A stretch of DNA of 64,000 nucleotides from Macrostomum hystrix (Eukaryota > Animalia > Platyhelminthes). Both the position numbers and the translations under genes were made by a program. The notes below the pieces were generated by a model. The model saw only the letters and a program-made list of their open reading frames with translations. It was not told the origin of the DNA and did no database searches. Positions 2,945-50,078 of the stretch are shown here, piece by piece (the first letter of the stretch is position 1; each line of letters begins with the position of its first letter). Location of the stretch: positions 1,178,001 to 1,242,000 of the forward strand of contig CATNEN010000037.1 of NCBI GenBank assembly GCA_950097015.1. The letters are read 5' to 3'.

Positions 2945-3815
2945 TAGGCTCAGAATTGATAGATATCTAGGCGCAGAACCGATAGATATCTAAGCTCAGA
3001 ATTGATATATATCTGGCTCATAATCAATACATATCTAGACTCACCATTTTAATAAATATCTAGGCTCAGAATCAATAAAAGTCTAGGCTCAACTTTTTTT
3101 AGATATCTCGGCTTAATATAGATAGATATCCTGGCTCAGAATCTTAAGATGTCTTGGTCAGAATCGATAGAGATCTAGGCTCGGAGAAGATAGATATGTA
3201 GGTTCAGCATTGATAGAAATCTAAGCTCAGAATTGATAGATATCTAGGCTCAGAATCTATAGAAATCTAGGCTAAGAATGGATAGATATCTAAGCTCAGA
3301 ACTGATACATACTAGGCTCAGAGTCGATAGAAATCTAGACTCGGAATGGATAGATATCTAAGCTCAGAATTGATAGATATCTAGGCTCAGCATTGATAGT
3401 TATCTAGGCTCAGCTTTGATAGATATCTAGGCTCAAAATCGATAGAAATTTAAGCTCAGAATCGATAGATATTTAAGCTTAGAATTGATAGAAATCTAGG
3501 CTCAGCACTGGTAGACTTCTTGGCTCAGCATTTATAGATATCTAGGCTCAGAATCGATAGATACCTAAGCTCAGAATAGATAGATAACGTAGTTTAGATT
3601 TGATAGATATCTAGGTTCAAAATCGATAGAAATTTAAGCTCAGAATCGATAGATATTTAAGCTCAGAATCGATAGATATTTAAGCTCAGAATTGATAGAA
3701 ATCTTAGCTCAGAATTGATAGAAACCTAAGCTCAGAATTGATAGATATCTAAGCTCAGAATCGATAAAAATCTTAGCTCTGAATCGATAGATATCTTATT
3801 TGAGAGTTGATATCT
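2945..3815. repeat. Degenerate ~20-21 bp minisatellite (CTCAGAATTGATAGATATCTAGG-like)
   Basis: About 40 diverged tandem units visible directly. Confidence 0.9.
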
Positions 3816-3988
3816 ATTGACTTACTAAATACGGTTTTATAATTGTAATGTTGCCTTCAAGGTCCCCAAAGGGGGGCCTAAATTGCTAGTTCAATACTAT
3901 ATGCAAAGGGACAACGCAAGTGAGCTTAGGGGATGATAATGATAAATTTTAGACTTCTTTAAATTAAATAGACTTTAAAACATACTAG

Positions 3989-4209
3989 TGTTGTGTATGC
4001 GGCTTGCATGCCGCCTTAGAGTGCGCGTGGCGCGTTTTGATTGGCTGGGGGGTCGGTCCGTCCGAACCGGTCTAGGCCGGTTGTTGTTTACTCTGACTGG
4101 CTAAAATATATATTTGTGCGCACAGGCCTTTGGAGGGCTCGCGTTTTTTTCCATCCTTCTAACCCCGTGCTTCGTTCTTCATTTGGCCACGCTGCCCCCA
4201 CACACAACA
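3989..4209 (+). repeat. 5' LTR (221 bp)
   Basis: TGTTGTGTATGCGG...CACACAACA, repeated at 8252-8449. Confidence 0.95.
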
Positions 4210-7200
4210 TGGCGACGAGCCTGAGCATTTCCGAGCCACGCATGTTTCTCGCCCACCCAGGACAGCCACACACGCCTTGGAATCGTTGGATCGAAGGGTT
4301 CAAGATCTACCTGGAGGCCTTGGACCTTAACGAAGCATCGGACGCACGCAAGAAGGCGATTCTCATCCATCTGCTTGGCGAGGAGGGCCAGCGAATCTAC
4401 ACGCTGAGGAATCTGCCAACGGCTAACGTCGACACCTTCGACAAGCTGGTGAAAGAGCTGAAGAGGATCTTCAGCCAGTCGCATAGCACCATCAGCAACC
4501 GCTACAGATTCAAGTCACGCGCCCAGATGCCTGGCGAGCCGATCAGCCGGTTCGTTGACGCCCTTCGCGAACTCGCAGCAGACTGCGAATACGGCGCTCT
4601 TCAAGACCAGATGATCAGGGACCAGATCATCGAGAAGACCCATTCGCCGCGCATCAGAGAGCGACTGCTCATGGAGAAGGTGCTCGAGCTGGAGACAGCC
4701 ACAGCCCTAGCGATTCAAGTTGAATCCGCCATCAACGACGCCAAGAACCTGCGCGACGGCAAGAGCGACAAGGAGTTGGAGTCCCGCATCCAGAAGATCA
4801 GCCAGCGTCCGCCACGCAAGGGACCCAAACATGCGATGCCGCAGAAATCTAGCTCGGACGCGCGATGCGGCAACTGCGGAATGGCTGGGCACGCCGCCCG
4901 CGCCCTTGAGTGTCCAGCGAAGGACAAGTCCTGCCTGCACTGCCACCGGGTCGGTCATTTTAAGTCATGTTGCCGACAGCGACGTAAGGTCCGCACCGTC
5001 AAGGATGACGACGATGACAATGAGCCATTTGAGGTGTCTGCAGTTCAGGGTGACGCATCTCTTTTAAGCTTTGTAAACTGCAGCATCGCAGAAATCGACG
5101 TCAAACTCTTGTTGGACACTGGCTCAAGGGTCAACATCATCAACGAGAAGACCGTAAAGCGACTTCCGAAGCAACTTGTCATCATGCCGACCCACAAGCA
5201 GCTGTTCTCCTACACCGGATCAGCAATCGAGGTTCTGGGGACGGCCGAGCTGCGCGTCGCGCACCATGGCAAGTCTGCAGTCTGCCGATTCTTCATCACT
5301 CGACGAAGTGCCAACATCCTTGGTATCGACGGCATGGAAAAGCTGGGTTTCTCGATCCGAGTCAACACGATCAGCAGCGTCGAGGACATCGCAGAGGAGT
5401 TCCCACGCATCTTCAACGGCATCGGCATGGCCAAGAAGTTCTGCCACAGGCCGCTGCTGCGCCAGGATGCGACGCCAACGGTCGAGCCGCTGCGCCGGGT
5501 GCCACTTGCGCTGCAGGACCGCGTGAAGGACGAACTGAACAAGATGGAGGCCGCAGGTATCATAGAGAAGATCGACGCGCCTCCTTGGGTGTCGAACTTG
5601 GTCGTCTCCAAGAAGAAGAACGGCGACCTGCGACTCTGCGTCGACCTGCGAAACTGCAACCAGGCCATCAACCCAGACAAGTTCCCCGTGCCAACGCAGG
5701 AGGAGCTGGCGCCGAGTTCGCGGGCGCCCAGGTGTTCACCAAGCTAGACCTGAAGCAGAGCTACCTTCAAATCCCGCTGCACCCAGGCAGCAGGCAGCTG
5801 ACTGCGTTCATCACTCACTGTGGTCTCTACCAGTTCACGAGAGTCCCATTCGGCATGTCCAGTTCCGGCGCCTGCTTCCAGAAAATCCTGTCAACGATCC
5901 TGGCCGACATCAAGGGTGTCCGACACTCGGTGGACGACATCGTCATTCACGGCTTCAACTCCGATGAGCACAACGAGCGACTCCTAGCGGTACTCCAACG
6001 ACTGAGCGACAACGGGTTGACGTTGAACAGGGAGAAGTGTCAGATCGGCGTCCCGGAGATCATCTTCCTGGGCTGCAGAATCTCTGCCAACGGAGTTCGA
6101 CCGTCCAAGTCCAATGTCGAGGACGTGCTCAGCATCCCGGCACCGACAACAGCACGAGCCGTTTCTTCGTTCCTGGCAACCGTCAACTACTTCGCTAAGT
6201 TCATCCCCGACTTCGCCAAGACTGCGAGGCCGCTGCGAGAGCTGCTCAAGAAAGACTCCGTTTTCCGCTGGACGAGCGAGTGCGACACAGCTTTTGTTGA
6301 GCTCAAGCGACAGGTGACGAGCCCGCCGGTGCTCAGCCACTTCGACTGCAACGCCGAGACCATCGTTAAGTGCGACGCCTCCGACTACGCGCTTGGTGCG
6401 GTGCTGCTCCAACGCGTCGGTGATTCGGAGAAGCCGGTCGCCTACGCATCGCGAGCACTGACACCGACGGAGTCCCGGTATTCGGCAAGCGAGAAGGAGG
6501 CTCTGGCGTGCATCTGGGCCCTCGAGCGGTGGTACATCTACACCTATGGCAGACGGCTGACTCTGCGCACCGACCATTCGGCGCTGAAGGCGCTGCTGTG
6601 CACCCAGGGCACTGGACTCAAGCCGCTACGCATCCACCGATGGAACGACCGGCTCCTGCAGTACAACTACATTGTCGAGTACAAGCCAGTAAAGGACAAT
6701 GTCGTCCCAGACTTTCTGTCGCGCCGCGAGAGGCCACCGGACTCATCCGACGGCGATGGCGACGACCTGCAGATGGCCGACATCCACCAGGTGCTTAACG
6801 GCGTCCTGTCAGCCGATCGCTACTGGACAAGCACTCCAAGGACGACCCGCTTATCACCAGCGTATCTGCGAAGCTGCGTTCCGGCTGGAAGGTGCCGCCA
6901 ACCGAAAAGGAGAAAATCTTCTTCAAGCTCAGCGACGAAATGTCAACAATCGGCAACTTCCTGGTTCGCGGTAATTGCGCAGTCGTGCCCGAGAGCTTGC
7001 GCGCTACGGCACTCGCACTGATCCACCAGGGGCACTGCGGCATCGTCAAGATGAAGCACCGAGCCCGCGACACCGTCTGGTGGCCAGGAATAGACGCTCA
7101 ACTGGAGACATTGGCCAAGTCCTGCATCAGCTGCTGCCTCGCCGAGAAGTGGAAGCGACCCGCCGCTCCAGCGCAGGTGACAGTGGCCGAAAGAGCCGTG

Positions 7201-8063
7201 GCACACGATTCAGCTGGATATTTTCGGCGAGATCCACGAGGCTCCGGGCAGCAGCCGGTTCGCGATCGTGGCCATCGACCTGCACTCTAAGTGGCCCGAG
7301 CTTCGAACTGCGACTTCGGTGACTACGGAAGTTATCGGCGACTTCCTCAATGACATGTTCGCTCGATGGGGGCTGCCATCCAAGATTGTGACCGACAACG
7401 GGCCCCAGTTCACCAGCCGCGCTCCTGGCCGGCCGAGTTCCTGGCCGGCCGTGGCGTGCAGCACATCAAGACTTCGCTGTACCATCCGCAGTCGAACTCA
7501 AATGTCGAGAGGCTCAACCGTACGCTGAATGAGTCGCTGAAGGCACATCTCAAGGACGGCATCAGATTCAAGGAGGCGGTCCGCGAGTTTCTGCAGTGCT
7601 ACCGGTCAACGGCGAATGCGACCACGGGCCTGACGCCTGCCGAGCTGATGATCAACCGGCCGCTCCGAGGGCCACTCAACCAGTGGAGCCAAGGCATCCG
7701 CCAGCCGACATCGAAAGCGACATCAGCGGAGGCCACGGAGCGGCGAGTCCAAGCCAAAAAGACAAGGAGAAGGCCAGGCTAGCCACCGATCGTCGTCGAG
7801 GCGCCCGACCTTCATGACTGCAGGCTGGCGACACCGTGCGCGTTTGCCGGCCACAGACTGCTCACAAGCTGGAGACACGGCTGGGCGACGTTCGGCAAAT
7901 CATTCGGCGGCTGGGCCCCGAGTCCTGGCTGCTCGACGACGGCTCGCCATGGCACTCCGATAACCTGGTCAGCGTCCCCAGTGCACCAGCGGCGGACAAT
8001 GGTGCGGCCGACGTTGGACTCGGCGCACTGATGGCGCCGACGCATGGCCAGAGCCACCGGTGA
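4209..8063 (+). pseudogene. gag-pol polyprotein, frameshifted (gag with 2 CCHC knuckles, aspartic protease, RT, RNase H, integrase)
   Basis: CGNCGMAGH and CLHCHRVGH knuckles; LLDTGS protease; DLRLCVDLR, FTKLDL, RVPFG and SVDD in RT; CDASDYALGAVL, EKEALA and TDH in RNase H; HQGH...WWPG...CISC and IDLHSKW...TDNGPQF...ERLNRTL in integrase. Frame changes near 5710, 6820, 7180, 7430 and 7770. Confidence 0.95.
4210..4219 (+). promoter_or_regulatory. Primer binding site TGGCGACGAG, probably for tRNA-Ser(GCT)
   Basis: Directly follows the 5' LTR. Complementary to ...CTCGTCG-CCA, the 3' end of eukaryotic tRNA-Ser(GCT) as recalled from vertebrate sequences. Confidence 0.8.
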
Positions 8064-8240
8064 GGCTGCCGGCGGGCAACGAGACGCCGCTGCCACAGCC
8101 TAGGCGGGGCAGCCGGATCCGGAGACCACCTAATCGGTTAAGCCCGAGTTCATATGCAGTTTGCTTGGAATGAACTGTTGAACTTTGCGCACCAATGGAC
8201 TGTTGTTTTCCCCCATGCGTTAATCCCCTTTTCCTTTTCG

Positions 8241-8251
8241 AAGGGGTGTGA
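8241..8251 (+). promoter_or_regulatory. Polypurine tract of the LTR element
   Basis: AAGGGGTGTGA immediately before the 3' LTR. Confidence 0.65.
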
Positions 8252-8449
8252 TGTTGTGTATGCGGCTTGCATACCACCTTAGAGTGCGTGTGGCGCGTTT
8301 TGATTGGCTGGGCGGCTCAGTCCGTCCGAACCGGTCTAGGCCGGGACGGGGGGTTGTTGTTTACTTTGACTGGATAAAATATATATTAGTGCGCACAGGC
8401 CTTTGGAGGGCTCGCGTTTTTTTCCAACCTTCTAGCCCCACACACAACA
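8252..8449 (+). repeat. 3' LTR (198 bp)
   Basis: Copy of 3989-4209 with about 10 substitutions, a 9-nt and a 1-nt insertion, and a ~33-nt deletion. Confidence 0.95.
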
Positions 8450-10404
8450 ACTAGGTAGCTGGTTTGCTGGTAAAAAAGTAAAGTCCAGTGACGTTCATCT
8501 GGACGTACTAATTGAGATCGGAGGACGACGGTCGACGAGCGCGAAAAGTTCTAAGAAAAAGTTATATAATAAAACAAAAATGAATAAAATTTAAAATATA
8601 AGTTTGTTAAATAGCTCAAATTTATACTACTTTTCTGATTTGCTTTTTATTTTTTCCTATTTTGAGGTAGGCCTAGGCGGTATATTACAAAAAGCTTCTT
8701 TTTCTTGTAAAACCCGTCGAATACGTAATGTCGTGACTGACGTATGTATCTGCCAATCAAAGTTTGCCAATGTGGCAGAAAGTTAGATGGAAGAAACTGT
8801 GGAGGAAAAGGTTAGGACCGAAGTGGCAGTTCGGCCAATAGCCTCAAGATCAGAGTAGCTCTTTCTTGACATAGGTAATAAGTAAATAAGTTAAGTAAAT
8901 ATCCACTCCTTACCTAGTAATAGTTGTAAGGGTGATTATAGATAGATTGTAAAAAAATATCCTAATTTCTTACTTCAGTGAAGGTGCCCTATCCATGTGG
9001 TAAGATTAAACTCCCACTTTTGGGTCAGTCTAGCTAGCTAAAGCTGAAACAATAGAAACATAGACTAATAAAGTCCCTAAGTTATGTTAGGTCTACCTAG
9101 TAAAATTTGGAATCTGCACAGCTACATAGAGATATTTGGACATGGCCGATGTAATGGTTTCCTATTATTAATATTTATTGCTGTTTTTAGCTTTAATGCC
9201 AATACTCAATACTTAATTGCTAGCAATGCTAGGTGCTATCTAGCCTATCTATAGCTGTATAGGCTATAGCTAGACTAGGCTTGTTTATTGTCTAATTAGG
9301 TTCTATAGCTAAGCTTGATATAACTAGGACTAGCTAAGTCTAAAACTAGCTGGCTATATTTAATTTAGTTGTATGCTGGTAGGCCTATGGCTAAACTATG
9401 GCTAGGCAAGCTAGACAGCTAAGCCTATGTATTTATTTATAGCTGTATTTATTGTTAGGGCCTAGCTATAAAAAGCTAGGTTAATTAGGTTATATTCTTA
9501 TGCTACACACTTAGGGCATGGGATTTATATGTTACAAAAAATATAGTTGTAAGGCCACAACTGAGTATCTATAATATTTGTAGCAATTATTGCTAAAGTA
9601 TCGTAAGGAAAGGAAATTATAGGCATACTAATTGAAATGACAGCAATCCTTTAGTTTGCATGATTAACTCAAATTAATTCTATACCAACTCTATAGTTAA
9701 AATTATAAACAGCACGACTTGCAACAACCAACAAGTCATTTATGTCATAGTTGTGTGTTTAGATAGTGTACTAGTGTGGCACCATGACAAGAATGTTGCC
9801 AATAGTAACAAGGCGAGAATAATATAATATTTCATTTTGTCTTTCCTATCACATCTTTTTCTCTCTCTTTGGTTTTGGCCATTGACATAGCCATACATTG
9901 TCCTATCATTCAAAAACTTGTGAGTATAAAATTGAATACAATACATTATGATTCAGCTTGTACTAATCTGTAGCACTGCAAATATAACATGTTATAGTCC
10001 TAGATCCAACAAATACATGTATCTCATATAATTGCCCCCAAGTGTCCCTACTGTTATCCCCCTAAGTTTCTGCATTATGCACATGGCTGGCTATCCGTCT
10101 AAGTTGGTCTTCTCATATTTATTAAGTGACTTTAAAAGTACTTAACATTTTCTAATTTTCTAATCCCTTTTTGGAAACAAAAATAATTTATTGACAATTT
10201 ATAATAGTTAATAGCATATAACTAGCTATAAGCATGCCTTCTGACACATCAAGACAGTGTACATAGTTGTTTCTTGTGGGATTTTTAAGCAGCTATAGCA
10301 AATTGCATGATTGCCACTGCTTCCACTTTCATTTTAACTTGCAGTTGGACAGTCTGGCTACGCCATTGCCACCTCCTGCAGCAGCAGCAGCAACCTCCAG
10401 ACCG

Positions 10405-11586
10405 ATGGAGACTGCAACTGAGGACTCACAACAGCAGCAGCAGCAGCAGCAGCTGGGCTCTGCTGAGCTGGACCAGGTGCAAGACTACCTGCGGCTGCAC
10501 CGAGCCGTCCTGCGCTTCGAGCCCGGTTTGGTTCAGGAGCCGGGCCAGCTGCTAGCCCTGCTGGACATCTCGCCGCCAGCTGTCCGCGGACTCCTGGTCA
10601 ACGCCCTGCGCTGCGCCGGCCTTTTAGACTTGGCCAATCGCTACGATGTCGAGCGCCGGATCGACGCCTCGCTATCGACATCGGCAGCGTCGGCTTCGGC
10701 TACCATAGCTTCGTCTGGCCGGCGACGCGGCCAATTCGGCTTGACAGTCGAGGTCAGCGCAATCCAGGTTTGCCCAGCAGATTTCGGACTGCTAACAGCG
10801 ACCTCGCCATTGTCGCCTTCGACTGCTCCGGCGTTGGCTTCTACACCAGCCGCCGGTGGCGACCGGCCAGCCTGCTGGATCAGCGTCGAAGCGTTGAATC
10901 GATCGGTTGATGATTTAGTCAGTTTGGCGGTCGGCGACGATAGCCGACTGTCAGTGTCGGCGATGACTGCAACTGCAATGGCCAATGCCGAACGAGATGA
11001 CGTCAGCGGCGGCTGCTTCGGCGGCTGCTGCGGTCGCTTATTTCGCTTCCCATTTAGCAGGCGCAAACGGCCGCCGCGCCAGCAGTCAGCTCTGCCGCAT
11101 CCGACCCCGCAATCTGTTGCCGCCTCCAAAAAATCCATGCTATCTAGCTCTCACAGGAAGTATCTGGCTGCAAATCAGCAGCAGTCGCTAGATGCCAACG
11201 AATCCTCCTTAATGCTCGAAAGCGCCGGTGGCGACGGTCTCCTTGTGCGCAAGGCTCGCCTGCTAGCTGAGAAATCGGCGGAGCTCTACCAGGCTGTTCT
11301 GGCCGATTCCGAGCAGCGGCTTCTGCGCTACCTGGAGCAGGACTGCGGCCTGCTATGCCTGGAGACTGGCTCGGATCCTTACTGCGGCTTGCAGCTGCAG
11401 TTGGCCTCCACCACAGCTGACTGCCTGCGCCGATTTCTAACCGGCCTCGCCAACGGCGGCGTTGCCCGCCGACTTGAGCAACTGCTGCTTACGGATCGCC
11501 TGCTGGCTGGCCTGCGACTGCGCCGCTGTCGACTGCGCTGCTGCGCTCCGCACGGCGAATTGGCGCTGGCCGAGCTGGGCGGCTGA
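10405..11586 (+). CDS. Putative death-fold + TRADD-N-like domain adaptor protein (true start may lie in an upstream exon)
   Basis: GC-rich ORF (10267-11586 in track; first internal ATG 10405; possible acceptor TTTTAACTTGCAG at ~10344). C-terminal segment YLEQDCGLLCLETGS...LQLQLASTTADCLRRFLTGLANGGVARRLEQLLLTDRLLAGLRLRRCRL matches my recalled pattern for metazoan TRADD-N-like domains. N-terminal LVNALRCAGLLDLANRY resembles the final helices of a death fold. Confidence 0.6.
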   Translation: METATEDSQQQQQQQQLGSAELDQVQDYLRLHRAVLRFEPGLVQEPGQLLALLDISPPAVRGLLVNALRCAGLLDLANRYDVERRIDASLSTSAASASATIASSGRRRGQFGLTVEVSAIQVCPADFGLLTATSPLSPSTAPALASTPAAGGDRPACWISVEALNRSVDDLVSLAVGDDSRLSVSAMTATAMANAERDDVSGGCFGGCCGRLFRFPFSRRKRPPRQQSALPHPTPQSVAASKKSMLSSSHRKYLAANQQQSLDANESSLMLESAGGDGLLVRKARLLAEKSAELYQAVLADSEQRLLRYLEQDCGLLCLETGSDPYCGLQLQLASTTADCLRRFLTGLANGGVARRLEQLLLTDRLLAGLRLRRCRLRCCAPHGELALAELGG

Positions 11587-13908
11587 CATGCTTGGTCAAT
11601 AGGGATAACTGTGCAGATTGATCAATAGGATCTGCTATGACATGCTTGGTCAATAGGGATAACTGTGCAGATTGATCAATAGGATCTGCTGTGCCATGCT
11701 TGTTCAATAGGGATAACTGAGCAGATTGATCAATAGGATCTGCTGTGCCATGCTTGGTCAATAGGGATAACTGTGCAGATTGATCAATAGGATCTGCTGT
11801 GACATGCTTGGTCAATAGGGATAACTGTGCAGATTGATCAATAGGATCTGCTGTGCCATGCTTGGTCAATAGGGATAACTGTGCAGATTGATCAATAGGA
11901 TCTGCTGTGACATGCTTGGTCAATAGGGATAACTGTGCAGATTGATCAATAGGATCTGCTGTGACATGCTTGGTCAATAGGGATAACTGTGCAGATTGAT
12001 CAATAGGATCTGCTGTGACATGCTTGGTCAATAGGGATAACTGTGCAGATTGATCAATAGGATCTGCTGTGCCATGCTTGGTCAATAGGGATAACTGTGC
12101 AGATTGATCAATAGGATCTGCTATGACATGCTTGGTCAATAGGGATAACTGTGCAGATTGATCAATAGGATCTGCTGTGACATGCTTGGTCAATAGGGAT
12201 AACTGTGCAGATTGATCAATAGGATCTGCTGTGACATGCTTGTTCAATAGGGATAACTGTGCAGATTGATCAATAGGATCTGCTGTGACATGCTTGGTCA
12301 ATAGGGATAACTGTGCAGATTGATCAATAGGATCTGCTGTGCCATGCTTGGTCAATAGGGATAACTGTGCAGATTGATCAATAGGATCTGCTGTGACATG
12401 CTTGTTCAATAGGGATAACTGTGCAGATTGATCAATAGGATCTGCTGTGACATGCTTGGTCAATAGGGATAACTGTGCAGATTGATCAATAGGATCTGCT
12501 GTGCCATGCTTGGTCAATAGGGATAACTGTGCAGATTGATCAATAGGATCTGCTGTGACATGCTTGGTCAATAGGGATAACTGTGCAGATTGATCAATAG
12601 GATCTGCTGTGACATGCTTGGTCAATAGGGATAACTGTGCAGATTGATCAATAGGATCTGCTGTGACATGCTTGTTCAATAGGGATAACTGTGCAGATTG
12701 ATCAATAGGATCTGCTGTGACATGCTTGGTCAATAGGGATAACTGTGCAGATTGATCAATAGGATCTGCTGTGACATGCTTGTTCAATAGGGATAACTGT
12801 GCAGATTGATCAATAGGATCTGCTGTGACATGCTTGGTCAATAGGGATAACTGTGCAGATTGATCAATAGGATCTGCTGTGCCATGCTTGGTCAATAGGG
12901 ATAACTGTGCAGATTGATCAATAGGATCTGCTGTGACATGCTTGGTCAATAGGGATAACTGTGCAGATTGATCAATAGGATCTGCTGTGCCATGCTTGGT
13001 CAATAGGGATAACTGTGCAGATTGATCAATAGGATCTGCTGTGACATGCTTGGTCAATAGGGATAACTGTGCAGATTGATCAATAGGATCTGCTGTGACA
13101 TGCTTGGTCAATAGGGATAACTGTGCAGATTGATCAATAGGATCTGCTGTGCCATGCTTGTTCAATAGGGATAACTGTGCAGATTGATCAATAGGATCTG
13201 CTGTGACATGCTTGGTCAATAGGGATAACTGTGCAGATTGATCAATAGGATCTGCTGTGACATGCTTGGTCAATAGGGATAACTGTGCAGATTGATCAAT
13301 AGGATCTGCTGTGACATGATTGGTCAATAGGGATAACTGTGCAGATTGATCAATAGGATCTGCTGTGACATGCTTGGTCAATAGGGATAACTGTGCAGAT
13401 TGATCAATAGGATCTGCTGTGACATGCTTGGTCAATAGGGATAACTGTGCAGATTGATCAATAGGATCTGCTGTGACATGATTGGTCAATAGGGATAACT
13501 GTGCAGATTGATCAATAGGATCTGCTGTGCCATGCTTGGTCAATAGGGATAACTGTGCAGATTGATCAATAGGATCTGCTGTGACATGCTTGTTCAATAG
13601 GGATAACTGTGCAGATTGATCAATAGGATCTGCTGTGACATGCTTGGTCAATAGGGATAACTGTGCAGATTGATCAATAGGATCTGCTGTGACATGCTTG
13701 GTCAATAGGGATAACTGTGCAGATTGATCAATAGGATCTGCTGTGACATGCTTGGTCAATAGGGATAACTGTGCAGATTGATCAATAGGATCTGCTGTGA
13801 CATGCTTGTTCAATAGGGATAACTGTGCAGATTGATCAATAGGATCTGCTGTGCCATGCTTGGTCAATAGGGATAACTGTGCAGATTGATCAATAGGATC
13901 TGCTGTGC
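11582..13908. repeat. 54-bp minisatellite, ~43 near-identical copies
   Basis: Unit GATCTGCTGTGACATGCTTGGTCAATAGGGATAACTGTGCAGATTGATCAATAG. Confidence 0.98.
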
Positions 13909-14029
13909 AAAAGAAAAACAATCATTTTATTAATTCACACCAAGTCGATCTAATCCGTTGTTCTATGCTTGCCTAATATGTTCTTTCATCTAGTGCCATA
14001 CCCCCTGCTATTTCAGCAGCCCTACCGGT

Positions 14030-14395
14030 GACCCTCACTCCTTCCGCTGTTCCTTCAGTCACTCCTTCCGCTGTTCCTTCAGTCACTCCTTCCGCTGTTT
14101 CTTTAGTCACTCCTTCCACTGTTCCTTTAGTTACTCCTTCCGCTGTTCCTTCAGTCACTCCTTCCACTGTTCCTTCAGTCACTCCTTCCACTGTTCCTTC
14201 AGTCACTCCTTCCGCTGTTCCTTCAGTCACTCCTTCCACTGTTCCTTCAGTCACTCCTTCCGCTGTTCCTTCAGTCACTCCTTCCGCTGTTCCTTCAGTC
14301 ACTCCTTCCGCTGTTCCTTCAGTCACTCCTTCCGCTGTTCCTTCAGTCACTCCTTTCACTGTTCCTTCAGTCACTCTTTCCCTGTTCCTTCAGGT
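14030..14395. repeat. 24-bp minisatellite (GTCACTCCTTCCGCTGTTCCTTCA), ~15 copies
   Basis: Direct observation. Confidence 0.95.
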
Positions 14396-15774: not shown

Positions 15775-16906
15775 AGATCTACCTGTAACTGTACTCAAGT
15801 ATCGGTTAGGATCTACCTGTAACTGTACTCCAATATCGGTTAGGATCTACCTGTAACTGTACTCAAATATCGGTTAGGATCTACCTGTAACTGTACTCAA
15901 ATATCGGTTAGGATCTACCTGTAACTCTACTCAAATATCGGTTAAGATCTACCTGTAACTGTACTCAAGTATCGGTTAGGATCTACCTGTAACTGTACTC
16001 CAATATCGGTTAGGATCTACCTGTAACTGTACTCAAATATCGGTTAGGATCTACCTGTAACTGTACTCAAATATCGGTTAGGATCTACCTGTAACTCTAC
16101 TCAAATATCGGTTAAGATCTACCTGTAACTGTACTCAAATATCGGTTAGGATCTACCTGTAACTGTACTCAAATATCGGTTAGGATCTACCTGTAACTCT
16201 ACTCAAATATCGGTTAAGATCTACCTGTAACTGTACTCAAGTATCGGTTAGGATCTACCTGTAACTGTACTCCAATATCGGTTAGGATCTACCTGTAACT
16301 GTACTCAAATATCGGTTAGGATCTACCTGTAACTGTACTCCAATATCGGTTAGGATCTACCTGTAACTCTACTCAAATATCGGTTAAGATCTACCTGTAA
16401 CTGTACTCAAATATCGGTTAGGATCTACCTGTAACTCTACTCAAATATCGGTTAAGATCTACCTGTAACTGTACTCAAATATCGGTTAAGATCTACCTGT
16501 AACTCTACTCAAATATCGGGTAAGATCTACCTGTAACTGTACTCAAATATCGGTTAAGATCTACCTGTAACTCTACTCCAATATCGGTTAAGATCTACCT
16601 GTAACTGTACTCAAATATCGGTTAAGATCTACCTGTAACTCTACTCCAATATTGGTTAAGATCTACCTGTAACTGTACTCAAATATCGGTTAAGATCTAC
16701 CTGTAACTCTACTCCAATATCGGTTAAGATCTACCTGTAACTGTACTCAAATATCGGTTAAGATCTACCTGTAACTCTACTCCAATATCGGTTAAGATCT
16801 ACCTGTAACTCTACTCCAATATCGGTTAAGATCTACCTGTAACTGTACTCAAATATCGGTTAAGATCTACCTGTAACTCTACTCCAATATCGGTTAAGAT
16901 CTACCT
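15775..16906. repeat. 34-bp minisatellite (GATCTACCTGTAACTGTACTCAAATATCGGTTAG), ~33 copies
   Basis: Period of 34 measured between 15781 and 15815. Confidence 0.97.
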
Positions 16907-17925
16907 ATGATTCTACTTCAATATTGATACGGCTCTGGCCGGAATTATATTTTAAGACAAATTTAGCGCCAATATTTTTTCGAATATATTTGCATATCCT
17001 GAAGCATATCTGTTATTAGAACTAAATGAGTAGTATATTGCGCTTGGTTTTAATTAAGAAGCTGACAGTTTAAGCAGTGTAAGTATATATTACACATAGA
17101 TAGGGTAAAACTGATAGATCGCAGCCCTTTCTGCCGGCGCGAACGGCAGCCATCCGTCTTCAGTGACCTTCCGCGAAGCCCAACAGCTGTAACCAAGGGT
17201 TTCATCTGCGACCCTAGAAAGTGCAAATTTGTCGAATTTGACTTTCTGCTGCATTTTCTGGCGCTAAATTTTCTACATAACGGCGAAATTTACAGGCGAA
17301 CAGGTTACGCCCGCACCATTACAATTGTTAGTTTTCAACTTAGAACAATTGGAACTTTAGTTTTTACCATTTGAACCTTACTGACTAGCGAAGAGTGGTT
17401 GAACTGAATTTGCACTTCCACTTCTGTTTGTACAATTCTTCCCATTTGGCTTTTCGCCTACTTTCTCCTAGTCTGGGCTACAGATTGTGTTCCTAGGCAA
17501 ACAAACTGTCATTCGGGGCTTACCTTTAACTCACATGGCATTTGCCTCTGTCTCGCCCTATTGGGAAGATTGGGAGATGGGACAACGCGTACACACGATC
17601 AGGAAATAGATTTCTATTTTTTTCAATTTTTTTATTTGACATTCAGCCAGCTGTAACAGGACACTGCGTGAGTGCTCGACTGGCACTATCAGCTTTTCAA
17701 ACTCATTGTTGAGTACGATACAGGCTTGTCATTCGGGTTCGCTGGCATACCAGAAGCCATTATCGTCCATTAGCGACTCAGGAATTACACTGCTAGAAAA
17801 ACTCTTGCTTCTGTCTGCACAGCCGATTTCGGATTGAAATGAACTTTTGTCTTTTAGTACACTGGCAGACTTTTTTTGTCTTCTACAAGCTGCCAAATAT
17901 AGCCGAGCTTGATTAATATAGCCTT

Positions 17926-18121
17926 GTTGTAGCCTTGTGGTTAGAGCATCGGGATCACGACTTGAAGGTCGGGGGTTCGATTCCTGACTCCATTAAAACA
18001 ATTTTTGTCCTTTAGCAAGACATTTAACTCTGCATTGCTTTAGTTCACCCAGCTGTTGAATGGGTACCAGCATTAGCTGGGGTAATTGAGGGTGAATGTG
18101 GCATCTAACCAGTCCATGGAC
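17926..18121 (+). mobile_element. tRNA-derived CORE-like SINE, lacking its 3' end
   Basis: A box (TAGCCTTGTGG), B box (GGTTCGATTCC), then GTCCTTTAGCAAGACATTTAACTC...CACCCAGCTGTTGAATGGGTACC. Homologous to the copies at 48555 and 49689. Confidence 0.85.
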
Positions 18122-18476
18122 AGAATTTTTTAGGGCAAGTGCTGCAGTGTGTTGAAGCCATGCTTGGAAGCCACATGGCTATATAGCTTGCACTTTTATT
18201 CCTGGGCACAGTAAGCAATATGCGCTCGAGCGCCGACTGCTGCATGCATCGACTGCCCCGAAAGCATTCAGCAATATTAGCTGTGTCGGAGGGCCTGGGT
18301 CCGGCTTCCTGAGTCCTTTAACGCCCCTTATTTTGGCGTGGCGTGGCGTGAGCACTTCTCATAAAGCGTGCTCGTAAAGCATTGCAGGCTTTGGAATGGC
18401 CTCATCCAACACCAGCATCCCCCCGATCCTCGCCTTAGAAATTCGTTGCCTTTTGCATGGCGGATCTATCTAAGAT

Positions 18477-20987: not shown

Positions 20988-22172
20988 CTACTGCTGCTCC
21001 CCGTCAGCACAGCAGCGGGTCCTGCAACCCTTGACGTAGATTCTGCGCAGCTCGGCCCGGAACTTCGAATTCATCATCGCGTAGACGAAGAAATTCAGCG
21101 AAGTGTTCAAATAGAAGATCCGATGCAGCGGCGAATCCGGTAGCAGCTTGAAGTTAATGAGAATCATGGGCAGCATACTGGCGTAGAAGAGCACGGTGGC
21201 GCCGAACAGCATCCAGGCCAGCTTTTTGGGGAACCACGACTCGCCGGACTGGTCCCGGCTGTCCTGGTTGGCGGCCGGTCGTCCGCTGTGGCCGCGCGAA
21301 CCAACGACCACCTGCGGCGGACGCAGCGACGATGGAGTCGGATAATCTTCGGTAGGACCGTCGGCTGTCTGCGGCGAGCTGGCTGCTGGCTTCGAAGTGG
21401 TCTCCAGTGTCAGGCTGCCGTCGGCTTCACCGTCGTTGCCGCCGACGCCGCCTACGCAGCCGCCATTGGTGACGGTGCAGTCGGCTCTGGACAGCAATGC
21501 CAGGGTCTGCTTGGTCACTTTTCGACGCGAACTGCGGCGTCGCTCCATGGAGGCCACAAAGGTGAAGATGCGAATGTACAGCGACAGGACCACCAGCACC
21601 GACAGGGTGCCCAGTCCGCCGTAAAAGTACAGCAGATAGGACTCTAGGCGCAGCTTCAGGCCGCACTGATCCTCAACCAGGTAGTGGCTGGTTACGTTAC
21701 ACACCTCTAGCAGCAGAAGACTCAATGCGGCGGCGAACAATGCTCCCAGAGTCTTCTTATAAGTCAGTCCGTGCTGGCTGGCTTTCACAATGCAAAGGTA
21801 GCGATCGATGGCTATAAACACCAGAATCCAGGCTTCCATTTCAAAGGCAGCGTATCGAGACGAAAGAATGACGGTGCTAAACCAGTGATTGGTGGCTTTC
21901 AGGCCGTGCTTGCTAGCCAGGTAGTCGGTGTACACCCGGTAACAGTCAGTGGGCAACACCACGGCCGATATAAACAGATCCATGGCGGACAGCACCGTGA
22001 TGAGGAAGCGAAGACTCTTCTCGCGGCTGGACGCGAACACCAGGATGACGTGGATATTGCCGAATACTCCCAGCACGCCCAGGGTGGAGTAGAAGGTCAG
22101 TGAGCCCACAGCAACTAAGGCCGACTCGGGCAGAGAGTGCTCGGTGCACTGGGCATTGCTAGTATTGCCCAT
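20988..22172 (-). CDS. Intronless class A (rhodopsin-family) GPCR, orphan/peptide-receptor-like, 394 aa
   Basis: Seven hydrophobic segments; GN in TM1 (GVFGNIHVI); LSAMD in TM2; IAIDRY at the end of TM3; long ICL3; LNFFVY in TM7 followed by NSKFRAELRRI (helix 8). Confidence 0.92.
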   Translation of the reverse strand: MGNTSNAQCTEHSLPESALVAVGSLTFYSTLGVLGVFGNIHVILVFASSREKSLRFLITVLSAMDLFISAVVLPTDCYRVYTDYLASKHGLKATNHWFSTVILSSRYAAFEMEAWILVFIAIDRYLCIVKASQHGLTYKKTLGALFAAALSLLLLEVCNVTSHYLVEDQCGLKLRLESYLLYFYGGLGTLSVLVVLSLYIRIFTFVASMERRRSSRRKVTKQTLALLSRADCTVTNGGCVGGVGGNDGEADGSLTLETTSKPAASSPQTADGPTEDYPTPSSLRPPQVVVGSRGHSGRPAANQDSRDQSGESWFPKKLAWMLFGATVLFYASMLPMILINFKLLPDSPLHRIFYLNTSLNFFVYAMMNSKFRAELRRIYVKGCRTRCCADGEQQ

Positions 22173-22494
22173 TATCTGTTAAATTCCCTATCAACTAATT
22201 AGCGCCTAGTGTATCTAGTCTCTGGTCAGTTCTGTTTGAAAAAAAGCGACAAACCGTCAACATTTGTACTCGCAGTTACTTCATATGAAGCTATCAATTT
22301 GTTTAAATTGTTTCCATTGGTCTAACCGGCCTTAGCCAATCTACGCTGCTGCACCCAGTACGATAGATGGTACAAAAAAAGCAAAAGAAGATCAAGTTTG
22401 ATTTTATTTCTAAGCTTCGTATACAGAATTCAAGGTAATAAAAGACAGGATCATTAAAAGTAAGCTGAAAATGATTGGAAAAAATAGATGAGAC

Positions 22495-48554: not shown

Positions 48555-48845
48555 CTTAGAGCGTCGGACTAACAACTTGAAAGTCGGGGGTTCGACTCCC
48601 GACTCCACTGTAACAATTTGGTTTCTTTACCAAGACAACTATGGATTGCTTCAGTTCCCCCAGCTGTTAAATAGTGCCAGCATCAGTTGGAGTAATTAAG
48701 AGAGGGTGTGGCGTCTCCCCAGTCCATGGACTGAACAGCCGAACGCAGCCTTCCGGTGCGCCGCGTAATAGCTGCGGCTGTGCTGTCGGCTGCACATCTG
48801 GCTGAATCGGGGCAGAGGTGTAACCAATTATCATAATATTATTAT
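48555..48845 (+). mobile_element. tRNA-derived CORE-like SINE with inverted 5' tip
   Basis: TTAGAGCGTCGGACT...GGTTCGACTCCC...CAGCTGTTAAATAGTGCCAG...GCTGCGGCTGTGCTGTCGGCTGCACATCTG and an AT-rich tail; same family as 49689-49992. Confidence 0.88.
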
Positions 48846-49505: not shown

Positions 49506-50078
49506 GGAGCAACGCTTGGAGGTGAATTTCGAGCTCGCGAATAATATTTTATAGTCTATGGCTCGAGAGGCGGCCTTGCGGAGCAAAGCTTGGAGGTGAA
49601 TTTCGAGCTCGCAAACAGTATTTTATAGGCTATGGCTCGAGAGGCGGCCTTGCGGAGCAAAGCTTGGAGGTGAATTTCGAGCTCGCAATAATAATAATTG
49701 ATTACACCTGCCCCAATTGGGTCAGATGTGCAGCCGACAGCACAGCCGCAGCTAATGCGCGGCGCATCTGAAGGCTGCGTACGGCTGTTCAGTCCACGGA
49801 CTGGGGGGACGCCACACACACCTTCAATTATCCCAGCTGATGCTGGTACCCATTTAACAGCTGGGTGAACTGAAGCAATGCAGAGTTAAGTGTCTTGCTA
49901 AAGGACGCAAATTGTTCCAGTGGAGTCGGGAATCGAACCCCTAACCTTCAAGTCGTGAGTCCGACGCCCTAACCACTAGGCTACAACCTCTACTCGCAAA
50001 CAATATTTTATAGTCTATGGCTCGAGAGGCGGCCTTGCGGAGCAGAGTGTAGGGGAGAATTTCAAGCTCGCAAACAAT
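49506..50078. repeat. 74-bp tandem repeat (~4 units) interrupted by a SINE
   Basis: GCTTGGAGG recurs at 49514, 49588 and 49662; the unit resumes at 49993. Confidence 0.9.
49689..49992 (-). mobile_element. Full-length tRNA-derived CORE-like SINE (~300 bp)
   Basis: Minus strand GAGGTTGTAGCCTAGTGGTTAGGGCGTCGGACTCACGACTTGAAGGTTAGGGGTTCGATTCCCGAC (A and B boxes), CORE-like middle, (ATT)n tail, and a CTCGCAA TSD at 49682-49688 and 49993-49999. Confidence 0.92.

What the first reader, a model, noticed from the sequence alone, without database searches (positions are those of the whole stretch)
10405..11586. Candidate death-fold + TRADD-N-like adaptor in an invertebrate
Seen: a stand-alone ~394-aa ORF with an N-terminal helical block ending LVNALRCAGLLDLANRY, a central Cys/basic patch (GGCFGGCCGRLFRFPFSRRKR) and a C-terminal block (...YLEQDCGLLCLETGS...LQLQLASTTADCLRRFLTGLANGGVARRLEQLLLTDRLLAGLRL). 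Established: TRADD-N-like domains occur with death-superfamily domains in apoptosis and innate-immune adaptors. Inference from remembered consensus, not a run search: this is such an adaptor, possibly palmitoylated and membrane-anchored. It could be an undescribed cell-death/immune component in this lineage.
Basis: inference. Interest (0 to 1): 0.75.

Follow-up and report, generated by a model that had tools for sequence, protein, structure and literature searches.

The report
Flatworm CARD plus TRADD-N-like adaptor gene

Summary
The ORF at 10405-11586 (+) is as described: 393 codons plus a stop.

**It is a real gene.**
- RNA-derived contigs from four runs cover 10344-11613 with no differences.
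- These contigs carry the Macrostomum spliced leader at the acceptor just upstream.
- Against its M. lignano counterpart (76% identical, syntenic), dN/dS is about 0.13 and dS about 1.2.

**Relatives.** Pfam finds nothing in the protein itself. An exhaustive HMMER search links it to single-copy "hypothetical" proteins of trematodes and bivalves. The bivalve members carry a clear Pfam CARD.

**Structure (AlphaFold2).**
- Residues about 17-82 form a degenerate CARD.
- An RRM-like domain is built from strand 106-122 plus residues 277-393.
- The best solved match is the TRADD N-domain (1f3v, Z 8.4).
- The best predicted match is a PF20694 TRADD-like_N cluster (TM 0.78, rmsd 2.0 Å).
- A GS motif sits in the β2-β3 turn, as in TRADD-N.
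- A disordered loop of about 150 residues splits this domain. It carries a family-wide Cys/aromatic plus polybasic motif, which could be an S-acylation site or a nuclear signal (untested).

**Weak point.** No sequence profile links the C-terminal domain to TRADD-N.

**Verdict.** This is a new member of the known death-fold plus TRADD-N adaptor kind, and of moderate interest.

The parts
10333..10344 (+). Polypyrimidine-rich tract and AG acceptor (ttttaacttgcag) used for spliced-leader trans-splicing. The mature mRNA body starts at 10345.
   Evidence: in all four runs the contig matches from 10344 and carries 23 unmatched 5' letters. With the G at 10344, these equal positions 12-35 of the 35-nt M. 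lignano spliced leader quoted in PMC8629364. Sequence read.
10345..10404 (+). 60-nt 5' leader of the mRNA. It is in frame with the CDS, so the ATG that ends the spliced leader could add 21 residues. This is not conserved in the M. lignano copy.
   Evidence: In L001 the spacing between the presumed equivalent acceptor (placed by eye; no reads were laid on L001) and the ATG is 68 nt, which would be out of frame (counted).
10405..11586 (+). Single-exon CDS of 393 codons plus TGA.
   Evidence: dN/dS is 0.12-0.13. RNA-derived contigs cover all of it with 0 differences.
10453..10650 (+). Degenerate CARD (residues about 17-82). Helix 1a is replaced by a poly-Q stretch, and the helix 2-3 region is about 7 residues shorter than in relatives.
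   Evidence: Alignments A2/A3. Pfam CARD in relatives. Family profile against PDB CARDs. VIA Z 6.6-6.8 to Apaf-1 CARD with rmsd 2.5-2.9 Å over 72-75 residues, at pLDDT of only 50-69.
10720..10770 (+). Strand β1 of the TRADD-N-like domain (residues 106-122, RRRGQFGLTVEVSAIQV). This is the most conserved motif of the family.
   Evidence: R106, G109 and Q110 are invariant in 17 sequences. pLDDT is about 91. The structural alignments to TRADD-N and to the PF20694 cluster start at residues 105-107.
10771..11232 (+). Predicted disordered insertion of about 154 residues between β1 and α1. It is 150-290 residues long in relatives and includes a weakly predicted strand and helix at residues 157-175 (CWISVEAL...).
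   Evidence: pLDDT below 50 for 134-154 and 173-275. The oyster model shows the same.
11008..11070 (+). Cys/aromatic cluster followed by a polybasic run (residues 202-222, GGCFGGCCGRLFRFPFSRRKR). It is a candidate S-acylation plus basic membrane tether, or alternatively a nuclear localisation signal.
   Evidence: An equivalent motif occurs in all 16 family members examined, inside an otherwise unconserved loop. C204 is nearly invariant. The function is inferred only.
11233..11583 (+). Rest of the TRADD-N-like (RRM-like) domain, residues 277-393: α1, β2, β3, a kinked α2, β4 and a C-terminal helix.
   Evidence: pLDDT 84-93. 1f3v_A Z 8.4. Atlas PF20694 cluster TM 0.78. Atlas feature score 0.92 with 15 of 30 hits in PF20694.
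11368..11373 (+). G322-S323 in the predicted β2-β3 turn. This is the position of the 'uS' motif that PMC8195603 describes as the conserved TRADD-N interaction determinant.
   Evidence: Strands 316-324 and 328-335. Motif definition. GS is conserved in the M. lignano copy but variable in bivalves.
11584..13907 (.). 54-bp satellite of 43 copies that begins with the gene's stop codon. The 3' UTR therefore runs into it.
   Evidence: The transcript contigs end 30 nt into the array, at 11613. There is no AATAAA or ATTAAA within 11584-13950.

Best explanation
The ORF is a functional, spliced-leader trans-spliced gene of a Macrostomum flatworm. It encodes a non-enzymatic adaptor of a conserved but uncharacterised spiralian family found in macrostomid and trematode flatworms and in bivalves.

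Shown here: the protein has an N-terminal CARD, degenerate in Macrostomum, followed by a TRADD-N-like RRM-fold domain. The first strand of that domain (residues 106-122) is separated from the rest (277-393) by a disordered loop of about 150 residues.

Inferred: the CARD recruits a CARD-bearing partner by homotypic death-fold contact, for example an Apaf-1-like protein or a CARD-caspase. The exposed β-sheet face of the TRADD-N-like domain, carrying the GS turn, binds a second partner as TRADD-N binds the TRAF2 MATH domain. The protein would thus bridge a sensor or receptor complex to an effector.

More speculative: the conserved Cys/aromatic plus polybasic motif in the inserted loop is S-acylated and holds the adaptor at a membrane.
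For: Real gene:
- RNA-derived contigs in 4 runs of one study cover 10344-11613 with 0 differences and carry the spliced leader.
- dN/dS is 0.12-0.13 at dS of about 1.1-1.2 against the syntenic M. lignano gene.

Family:
- HMMER over 1.84 billion representatives finds trematode and bivalve proteins at 6e-11 to 5e-4.
- These are named only 'hypothetical' or 'uncharacterized'.

CARD:
- Pfam CARD at 1e-9 to 1e-11 in two relatives: oyster P0010 and P0003 (an unlabelled metagenome contig). Precomputed PF00619 is recorded on the named bivalve hits.
- The family profile hits caspase-9/Apaf-1 CARDs at about 2e-4.
- Z is 13.8 for the oyster model and 6.6-6.8 for the window model.

TRADD-N-like domain:
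- 1f3v_A is the top solved structure (Z 8.4, rmsd 3.4 Å, 110 residues, 21% identity).
- The top Atlas structural match is a PF20694 cluster (TM 0.78, rmsd 2.0 Å, query residues 105-393), followed by DEDD.
- Atlas feature look-alikes are DEDD and TRADD for the whole protein. For the C-terminal part the score is 0.92 and 15 of 30 hits are in PF20694.
- GS lies in the β2-β3 turn.
- The oyster orthologue gives the same order of secondary-structure elements in the C-terminal part; its C-terminal domain was not tested against known folds, because CARD hits filled both lists.

Precedent: the CARD+TRADD-N (DEDD2-clade) architecture is tabulated for Lingula in PMC8195603.

Loop motif: the Cys/aromatic plus polybasic motif is conserved in every member examined.
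Against: - No sequence profile connects the C-terminal domain to TRADD-N. Pfam at E<=10 lists neither PF20694 nor PF09034 for the whole protein or for 10 isolated C-terminal domains. The C-terminal profile does not hit TRADD in the PDB.
- Plain Foldseek is not significant (E 1.3).
- In the Foldseek-independent search, generic ACT/RRM folds score Z 6.8 while the NMR TRADD-N scores Z 5.8.
- The models rest on only 15-17 sequences, with mean pLDDT about 59-60.
- The Macrostomum CARD is modelled at pLDDT 50-69, lacks helix 1a, and gets no Pfam hit on its own.
- Binding partners, lipidation, localisation and any role in cell death or immunity were not and could not be tested.
- All RNA evidence comes from one study and from contigs, not raw reads.
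Confidence: 0.7

Rival explanations
1. The C-terminal domain is a generic RRM/ACT-like α+β sandwich with no specific kinship to TRADD-N. The protein would then be a CARD protein with an unrelated small-molecule-, RNA- or protein-binding module.
For: ACT and other RRM-like folds score as high or higher in the Foldseek-independent search (Z 6.8 against 5.8 for NMR TRADD-N). No HMM links it to TRADD-N. Z values near 8 are common for models without clear relatives, as the tool note says.
Against: Crystal TRADD-N is the single best solved match and has the highest identity, 21% against 4-15% for other RRM-like hits. The best predicted-structure match is a PF20694 cluster at rmsd 2.0 Å covering 91% of the target, and DEDD is second. 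Independent feature look-alikes converge on PF20694. The GS turn is in the expected place. Fusion to a death-fold domain is the typical context of TRADD-N (PMC8195603).
Confidence: 0.13
2. It is a divergent DEDD/DEDD2-type nuclear protein. On this reading the basic run in the loop is a nuclear localisation signal, as in DEDD, and the protein acts in the nucleus or nucleolus rather than at a membrane.
For: DEDD clusters are among the nearest by features and by structure. The overall plan matches DEDD: a death-fold domain, a basic stretch, then TRADD-like_N. RRKR/KKKK runs fit classical nuclear localisation signals.
Against: The N-terminal domain is a CARD closest to Apaf-1 (27-31% identity), not a DED. 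Flatworms already have separate DED+TRADD-N DEDD orthologues in the supplementary table of PMC8195603: M. lignano Mlig006619g1, S. mansoni Smp_169670 and a Clonorchis 'Dedd'. The basic run is always immediately preceded by a Cys/aromatic cluster, which is more typical of acylated membrane tethers (inference).
Confidence: 0.12
3. The window copy is a decaying or non-functional duplicate. On this reading the CARD is degenerate, a satellite array abuts the stop codon, and the transcript is noise.
For: The CARD gets no Pfam hit and lacks helix 1a. A 2.3-kb satellite replaces the normal 3' flank seen in M. lignano. A retrotransposon lies 2 kb upstream.
Against: dN/dS is 0.12 in the CARD-encoding first 100 codons and 0.13 overall, at near-saturated dS. 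The frame is intact and the stop position is the same as in M. lignano. The mRNA is precisely trans-spliced in four samples. The M. lignano copy has the same CARD peculiarities, so they predate the split of the two copies.
Confidence: 0.03

Closest known systems
CARD+TRADD-N (DEDD2-clade) two-domain proteins of the brachiopod Lingula anatina (e.g. LOC106162832, 369-404 aa), tabulated in Kaur et al. 2021, eLife (PMC8195603, Fig. 4 source data)
   Same: They share the domain order and a similar size (CARD then TRADD-N, about 370-400 aa), in another spiralian phylum.
   Different: Orthology could not be tested because those sequences could not be fetched. The stored part of that table lists flatworms only with DED+TRADD-N proteins. 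It does not contain Mlig020889, oyster LOC105334481 or Clonorchis CLF_108928, but the file was cut when stored. Whether the Lingula proteins have the large insertion inside the TRADD-N domain is unknown.
DEDD / DEDD2 (FLAME-3): DED + nuclear localisation signals + TRADD-like_N (PF20694)
   Same: Both join a death-fold domain to a basic stretch and a TRADD-like_N fold. DEDD clusters are among the nearest by language-model features and by predicted structure.
   Different: The N-terminal domain here is a CARD, not a DED. β1 follows the CARD directly and the long linker lies inside the TRADD-like domain. There is no HMM-level similarity. Flatworms have separate DEDD orthologues.
TRADD (TRADD-N PF09034 + Death domain); structure 1F3V, TRADD-N bound to the TRAF2 MATH domain
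   Same: It is the best solved structural match for residues 107-393 (Z 8.4, 110 residues, 21% identity). A tiny-residue-Ser motif lies in the β2-β3 turn. Both are coupled to a death-fold domain.
   Different: The domain order is reversed: the death-fold domain is N-terminal here. That domain is a CARD rather than a Death domain. According to PMC8195603, classical TRADD is confined to vertebrates. No sequence-level hit was found.
Apaf-1 / caspase-9 CARDs (PF00619)
   Same: The oyster orthologue's CARD superposes on Apaf-1 CARD at Z 13.8, rmsd 2.1 Å and 28% identity. The family profile hits these CARDs at about 2e-4.
   Different: There is no NB-ARC or protease domain. In Macrostomum the CARD is shortened and scores below every Pfam threshold.

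Membership tests
CARD (PF00619, death-fold superfamily) | Significant match to the CARD profile | tested here: inconclusive
   The window protein alone gets no Pfam CARD hit at E<=10. Its homologues P0003 and P0010 hit at 1.3e-9 and 1.6e-11. The 17-sequence family profile, which includes the window protein, hits caspase-9/Apaf-1/CARD8 CARDs at 2e-4 to 2e-3. The A1 profile aligns the window's helices 4-6 to those CARDs' owners at E 1e-10.
CARD (PF00619, death-fold superfamily) | Six-helix death-fold bundle | tested here: met
   In the window model, residues 12-87 match Apaf-1 CARD at Z 6.6-6.8 with rmsd 2.5-2.9 Å over 72-75 residues, but pLDDT is only 50-69 and helix 1a is replaced by poly-Q. 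The oyster orthologue gives Z 13.8, rmsd 2.1 Å, 87 residues and pLDDT about 90.
TRADD-N superfamily (PF09034 / PF20694 / PF13820) | RRM-like β1-α1-β2-β3-α2-β4 sandwich with kinked helices and a four-stranded sheet | tested here: met
   The AF2 elements are E110-122, H277-313, E316-324, E328-335, H338-349/352-361/364-369 and E374-380. 1f3v_A gives Z 8.4 and is the top of the PDB second look. A PF20694 Atlas cluster gives TM 0.78 and rmsd 2.0 Å. This rests on predicted models, not an experimental structure.
TRADD-N superfamily (PF09034 / PF20694 / PF13820) | Conserved tiny-residue-Ser ('uS') motif in the β2-β3 turn (PMC8195603) | tested here: met
   G322-S323 lie between the predicted strands 316-324 and 328-335 and are conserved in the M. 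lignano copy. The motif is not conserved in all bivalve members, and in trematodes the turn carries an insertion.
TRADD-N superfamily (PF09034 / PF20694 / PF13820) | Sequence-profile match to a TRADD-N family model | tested here: not met
   hmmscan of the whole protein and of 10 isolated C-terminal domains at E<=10 gives no TRADD_N or TRADD-like_N hit. The C-terminal profile against PDB sequences gives no TRADD hit. A word search with the C-terminal profile found only fragments of the same family. A profile-profile (HHpred) test could not be run here.
TRADD-N superfamily (PF09034 / PF20694 / PF13820) | Coupling to a death-like superfamily domain in metazoans | tested here: met
   A CARD lies N-terminal in the same polypeptide. 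The CARD+TRADD-N architecture is recorded in PMC8195603.
DEDD/DEDD2 orthologous group | N-terminal death effector domain (PF01335) | tested here: not met
   Profiles and structures identify a CARD, and no DED hit was found. Flatworm DEDD orthologues are different genes.
S-acylated, polybasic membrane-tethered proteins | Cysteines that are acylated, and membrane association that depends on them | not testable with these tools
   Only the motif is seen: a Cys/aromatic cluster followed by 4-6 Lys/Arg in all 16 members.

The most novel reading that the evidence does not exclude
This is a single-copy orthologue conserved from free-living and parasitic flatworms (Schistosoma, Clonorchis, Fasciola) to bivalves. 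It encodes a membrane-tethered (S-acylated) CARD-TRADD-N adaptor whose TRADD-N domain is split by a regulatory disordered loop. On this reading it would be the missing bridge between a membrane receptor or TRAF-type complex and a CARD-caspase or Apaf-1-like effector in spiralians. It escaped the published TRADD-N census because its sequence lies below profile thresholds.
Probability: 0.25. Interest if true: 0.7.

Novelty: new member of a known kind. Interest (0 to 1): 0.5.

Why it matters
Death-fold plus TRADD-N proteins are the adaptors that wire receptors to caspases and to NF-kB-type signalling. In flatworms only a DEDD-type member had been catalogued. This result defines a second, CARD-bearing family present in Macrostomum and in medically important trematodes (Schistosoma, Clonorchis, Fasciola, Paragonimus) as well as in bivalves. 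All members are annotated only as hypothetical proteins.

Macrostomum lignano is amenable to RNAi and transgenesis, so the gene gives a direct handle on how cell death or innate signalling is assembled in flatworms. The conserved Cys/polybasic loop inside the TRADD-N-like domain is a concrete, testable regulatory feature.

The case also shows that this family is invisible to Pfam HMMs and recoverable only through family profiles plus structure prediction.

Tried and rejected
- Pfam on the whole protein gave only chance hits (Talin_VBS2, TraF).
- phmmer against PDB sequences gave nothing meaningful.
- Pfam on isolated C-terminal domains of 10 members gave no TRADD family, only scattered chance hits.
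- The C-terminal profile against PDB sequences gave chance hits only, e.g. surfactant protein B at 0.07.
- A word-based search with the C-terminal profile returned only 5 fragments of the same family, none with a Pfam label.
- Plain Foldseek against the PDB with the full model was not significant, although TRADD-N ranked 2-3.
- P0007 from the HMMER search is a repeat protein matched on a short repeated stretch. I discarded it as spurious.
- ARAGORN found no tRNA in the M. lignano intron that looked tRNA-like by eye.
- A search of paper full texts for the family's gene and protein identifiers found nothing.
- Earlier notes of this scan hold nothing on this ORF or on death-fold genes.
- I rejected the idea that the protein is the flatworm DEDD orthologue: it has a CARD, not a DED, and separate DEDD genes are listed in PMC8195603.
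- I rejected a transmembrane reading of the Cys patch, because it is too short and is interrupted by Arg.
- The 810-aa minus-strand ORF at 11489-13921 is an artefact of the 54-bp satellite.
- Procedure note: I concatenated the two M. lignano exons inside a script for a codon alignment, with one codon too many at the junction. I repeated the calculation exon by exon and got the same result.
Full report
**1. The observation**

The + strand frame from the ATG at 10405 to the TGA at 11584-11586 is open for 393 codons, and it contains the three quoted sequence blocks. The CDS has 63% GC (GC3 68%), set in 33%-GC surroundings. The open frame continues upstream to 10267, but the mRNA does not (section 2).

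**2. It is a real, expressed gene**

- The word-index search found one relative, M. lignano BOX15_Mlig020889g2 (P0001, 388 aa, 76% identity over the full length).
- Its locus (L001, NIVC01000214.1) has a Complex1_LYR gene upstream.
- A second conserved block follows downstream in both loci: window 21012-22173 against L001 19897-21073. The two loci are therefore syntenic.
- Only the CDS aligns at the DNA level (73% identity); the flanks do not.
- Codon alignment gives dN 0.15, dS 1.18 and a ratio of 0.13. Done exon by exon, the ratios are 0.122 and 0.128. This is strong purifying selection at near-saturated synonymous divergence.
- The window protein is absent from the M. lignano protein set, and dS exceeds 1. 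The window probably comes from another Macrostomum species or a deeply diverged copy. This is inference.

Four runs of one study hold the stretch. Laid on 8000-11640, each gives contigs that cover 10344-11613 with no differences: a single 1293-nt contig in three runs, and three overlapping contigs in the fourth. Each run's 5'-most contig carries 23 unmatched 5' letters, TGCGAAGACTCAATTTATTGCAT. Together with the G at 10344, these letters equal positions 12-35 of the published 35-nt M. lignano spliced leader (PMC8629364).

The runs are not on record as RNA, but a spliced leader joined exactly at the acceptor ...ttgcag (AG at 10343-10344) shows that the contigs derive from mature mRNA. The mRNA is unspliced across the whole ORF. 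The M. lignano copy has one 642-nt GT..AG intron, between codons Q42 and E43 of P0001 (Q44/E45 in window numbering; L001 10127-10768), which the window lacks.

**3. Relatives**

Pfam finds nothing in the protein itself. Because the word search and the family scan left the protein open, I ran the exhaustive HMMER search with the two-sequence profile. It found nine further proteins at E<=5e-4:
- Trematode proteins of about 580 aa from Clonorchis, Schistosoma, Paragonimus, Fasciola and Dicrocoelium.
- Two proteins of 454-484 aa. One of them is Crassostrea gigas LOC105334481.
- One spurious repeat protein (P0007).

A second word search with the profile added scallop and Saccostrea members. All of these are annotated only as hypothetical or uncharacterised, and no paper text mentions their identifiers.

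The alignment shows four conserved elements:
- An N-terminal CARD-like block (...YL..HGAL ... LL.NALR.tGq..LA..LD).
- The motif RRRGQ.sL.I.l.AIKv.
- A Cys/aromatic plus polybasic patch.
- A C-terminal block (..FY..L....lvKYfEQ..GvLvL...l.v..va....v.rl....L...le..l....l..l....lrL.v.ld..E..lA..EL).

**4. Domains**

*CARD*
- Two relatives — oyster P0010 and P0003, an unlabelled metagenome contig — hit Pfam CARD at 1e-9 to 1e-11. Precomputed PF00619 is also recorded on the named bivalve hits.
- The 17-sequence family profile hits caspase-9, Apaf-1, CARD8, RAIDD and BCL10 CARDs in the PDB, best at about 2e-4.
- AF2 of the oyster orthologue gives a CARD at pLDDT of about 90. It superposes on Apaf-1 CARD at Z 13.8, rmsd 2.1 Å and 28% identity.
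- In the window protein the CARD is degenerate. Poly-Q replaces helix 1a, and about 7 residues are missing between helices 2 and 4.
- Its pLDDT is 50-69 and its Z is 6.6-6.8 to Apaf-1 CARD.
- It is still under constraint: dN/dS is 0.12 over the first 100 codons.

*TRADD-N-like domain*

AF2 of the window protein (MSA A3; mean pLDDT 58.9) is confident for strand 110-122 (about 91) and for residues 277-390 (84-93). Together these form β1-α1-β2-β3-α2(kinked)-β4 plus a terminal helix.

| Search | Result |
|---|---|
| ESM Atlas, by shape | Best match is a 123-aa cnidarian cluster annotated PF20694 TRADD-like_N (TM 0.78 by target, 112 residues, rmsd 2.0 Å, query 105-393). Second is the DEDD cluster (PF20694 + DED). 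|
| VIA second look at Foldseek's PDB list | Crystal TRADD-N 1f3v_A is first (Z 8.4, rmsd 3.4 Å, 110 residues, 21% identity). The next row is 1.5 Z lower (an IS200-type transposase, RRM-like). |
| Foldseek-independent PDB search | Generic ACT/RRM folds reach Z 6.8. NMR TRADD-N 1f2h reaches Z 5.8. |
| Plain Foldseek | Not significant (E 1.3), with TRADD-N at ranks 2-3. |
| Language-model features | Whole protein: DEDD, CARD and TRADD clusters at 0.83-0.85. Residues 276-393: 0.92, with 15 of 30 hits in PF20694. |

Kaur et al. (PMC8195603) define TRADD-N as an RRM-like sandwich with kinked helices and a conserved tiny-residue-Ser motif in the β2-β3 turn. The window protein has G322-S323 exactly there. 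The motif is conserved in M. lignano, but it is variable in bivalves.

The oyster model gives the same order of secondary-structure elements in its C-terminal part. Its C-terminal domain was not itself tested against known folds, because CARD hits filled both search lists.

The weak point is sequence. No HMM reaches PF20694 or PF09034, and none reaches TRADD in the PDB. HHpred could not be run here.

*Inserted loop*
- β1 follows the CARD after about 20 residues.
- A predicted disordered loop then separates β1 from α1. It is 150 residues long here and 150-290 in relatives.
- Every member carries a Cys/aromatic cluster in this loop followed at once by 4-6 Lys/Arg:
  - GCFGGCCGRLFRFPFSRRKR in Macrostomum;
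  - CWCFCRRSKTKKK or CWCLCIPRRKKAKK in bivalves;
  - GCF..L.CLF...KKK in trematodes.
- The patch is too short and too charged to span a membrane.
- It resembles S-acylation sites backed by a polybasic stretch. The basic run could instead be a nuclear signal, as in DEDD. Both readings are inference.

**5. How it most likely works**

- Shown: the domain composition, conservation and expression.
- Inferred from the known behaviour of these domains: the CARD makes a homotypic contact with a CARD-bearing effector or scaffold. The β-sheet face of the TRADD-N-like domain binds a second partner, as TRADD-N binds the TRAF2 MATH domain in 1F3V. The protein would then be a bridging adaptor.
- Speculative: the loop motif places it at a membrane, or possibly in the nucleus.

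**6. Comparison with what is known**

- PMC8195603 tabulates the CARD+TRADD-N (DEDD2-clade) architecture for Lingula, at 369-404 aa.
- For flatworms, the stored part of the same table lists only DED+TRADD-N DEDD orthologues. These are Mlig006619g1, Smp_169670 and Clonorchis RJW68759.1.
- The identifiers of the present family were not found there, but the file was cut when stored.
- The gene is therefore best filed as a new member of the known death-fold plus TRADD-N adaptor kind.
- Two features deserve notice. It is a single-copy orthologue shared by flatworms and bivalves, rather than a lineage-specific expansion. Its TRADD-N-like domain is split by a loop with a conserved Cys/polybasic motif.

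**7. Context**

- The stop codon is the first triplet of a 54-bp, 43-copy satellite (11584-13907).
- The M. lignano copy instead has an ordinary flank, with AATAAA about 85 nt after the stop.
- A degraded LTR retrotransposon lies at about 4.08-8.44 kb.

Noticed in passing
window 11584-13907: A 54-bp satellite (43 copies, 98% matches) starts exactly at the gene's TGA, so the 3' UTR runs into it. There is no AATAAA or ATTAAA in the array. Contigs of the bare repeat unit have 8-13 times the word depth of the gene's contig in the same RNA-derived runs. The M. lignano orthologue has no such array and has AATAAA about 85 nt after its stop. The 810-aa minus-strand ORF at 11489-13921 is an artefact of the repeat.
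   Followed up: partly
L001 10127-10768 vs window 10536/10537: Intron presence/absence. The M. lignano copy has a 642-nt phase-0 GT..AG intron between codons Q42 and E43 of P0001 (Q44/E45 in window numbering), while the window copy is continuous there. The intron holds a stretch that looks tRNA/SINE-like by eye, but ARAGORN finds no tRNA.
   Followed up: partly
window 10345-10404: The spliced leader ends in ATG, and the 60 nt between the acceptor and the annotated ATG are in frame and stop-free. Translation from the leader's ATG would add 21 residues (MLDSLATPLPPPAAAAATSRP). In the M. lignano copy the corresponding spacing is 68 nt, measured from a presumed equivalent acceptor placed by eye, which would be out of frame. 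The extension is therefore probably not conserved.
   Followed up: partly
window 4079-8439: A degraded LTR retrotransposon. Direct repeats at 4079-4166 and 8352-8439 (94% identical, 4273 nt apart) flank ORFs for gag (Zn knuckle), protease, reverse transcriptase, RNase H and integrase. These ORFs are split over several frames (4041-5747, 5585-7021, 6892-7290, 7366-7782). I only described it.
   Followed up: partly
window 9722-10167: Short RNA-derived contigs (168-424 nt, depth 3-6) lie in the AT-rich stretch just upstream of the acceptor in three of the four runs. They could be outron or precursor remnants, the 3' end of another transcript, or an antisense RNA. A 68-aa minus-strand ORF lies at 9740-9946.
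   Followed up: no
window 21012-22173 vs L001 19897-21073: A second block conserved with the M. lignano locus (78% over 1190 nt), downstream and collinear. It is probably the next syntenic gene and was not examined.
   Followed up: no
window 17925-18125, 48556-48844, 49687-49991 vs L001 12207-12509: A dispersed repeat of about 300 nt, 80-88% identical to a stretch just downstream of the M. lignano orthologue, present in both orientations in the window. It is probably a SINE or other mobile element.
   Followed up: no
window 3500-3864, 14035-14393 and 15776-16000: Further short-period tandem arrays with periods of 23 bp, 24 bp (15 copies) and 34 bp. The window is rich in micro- and minisatellites around this gene.
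   Followed up: no
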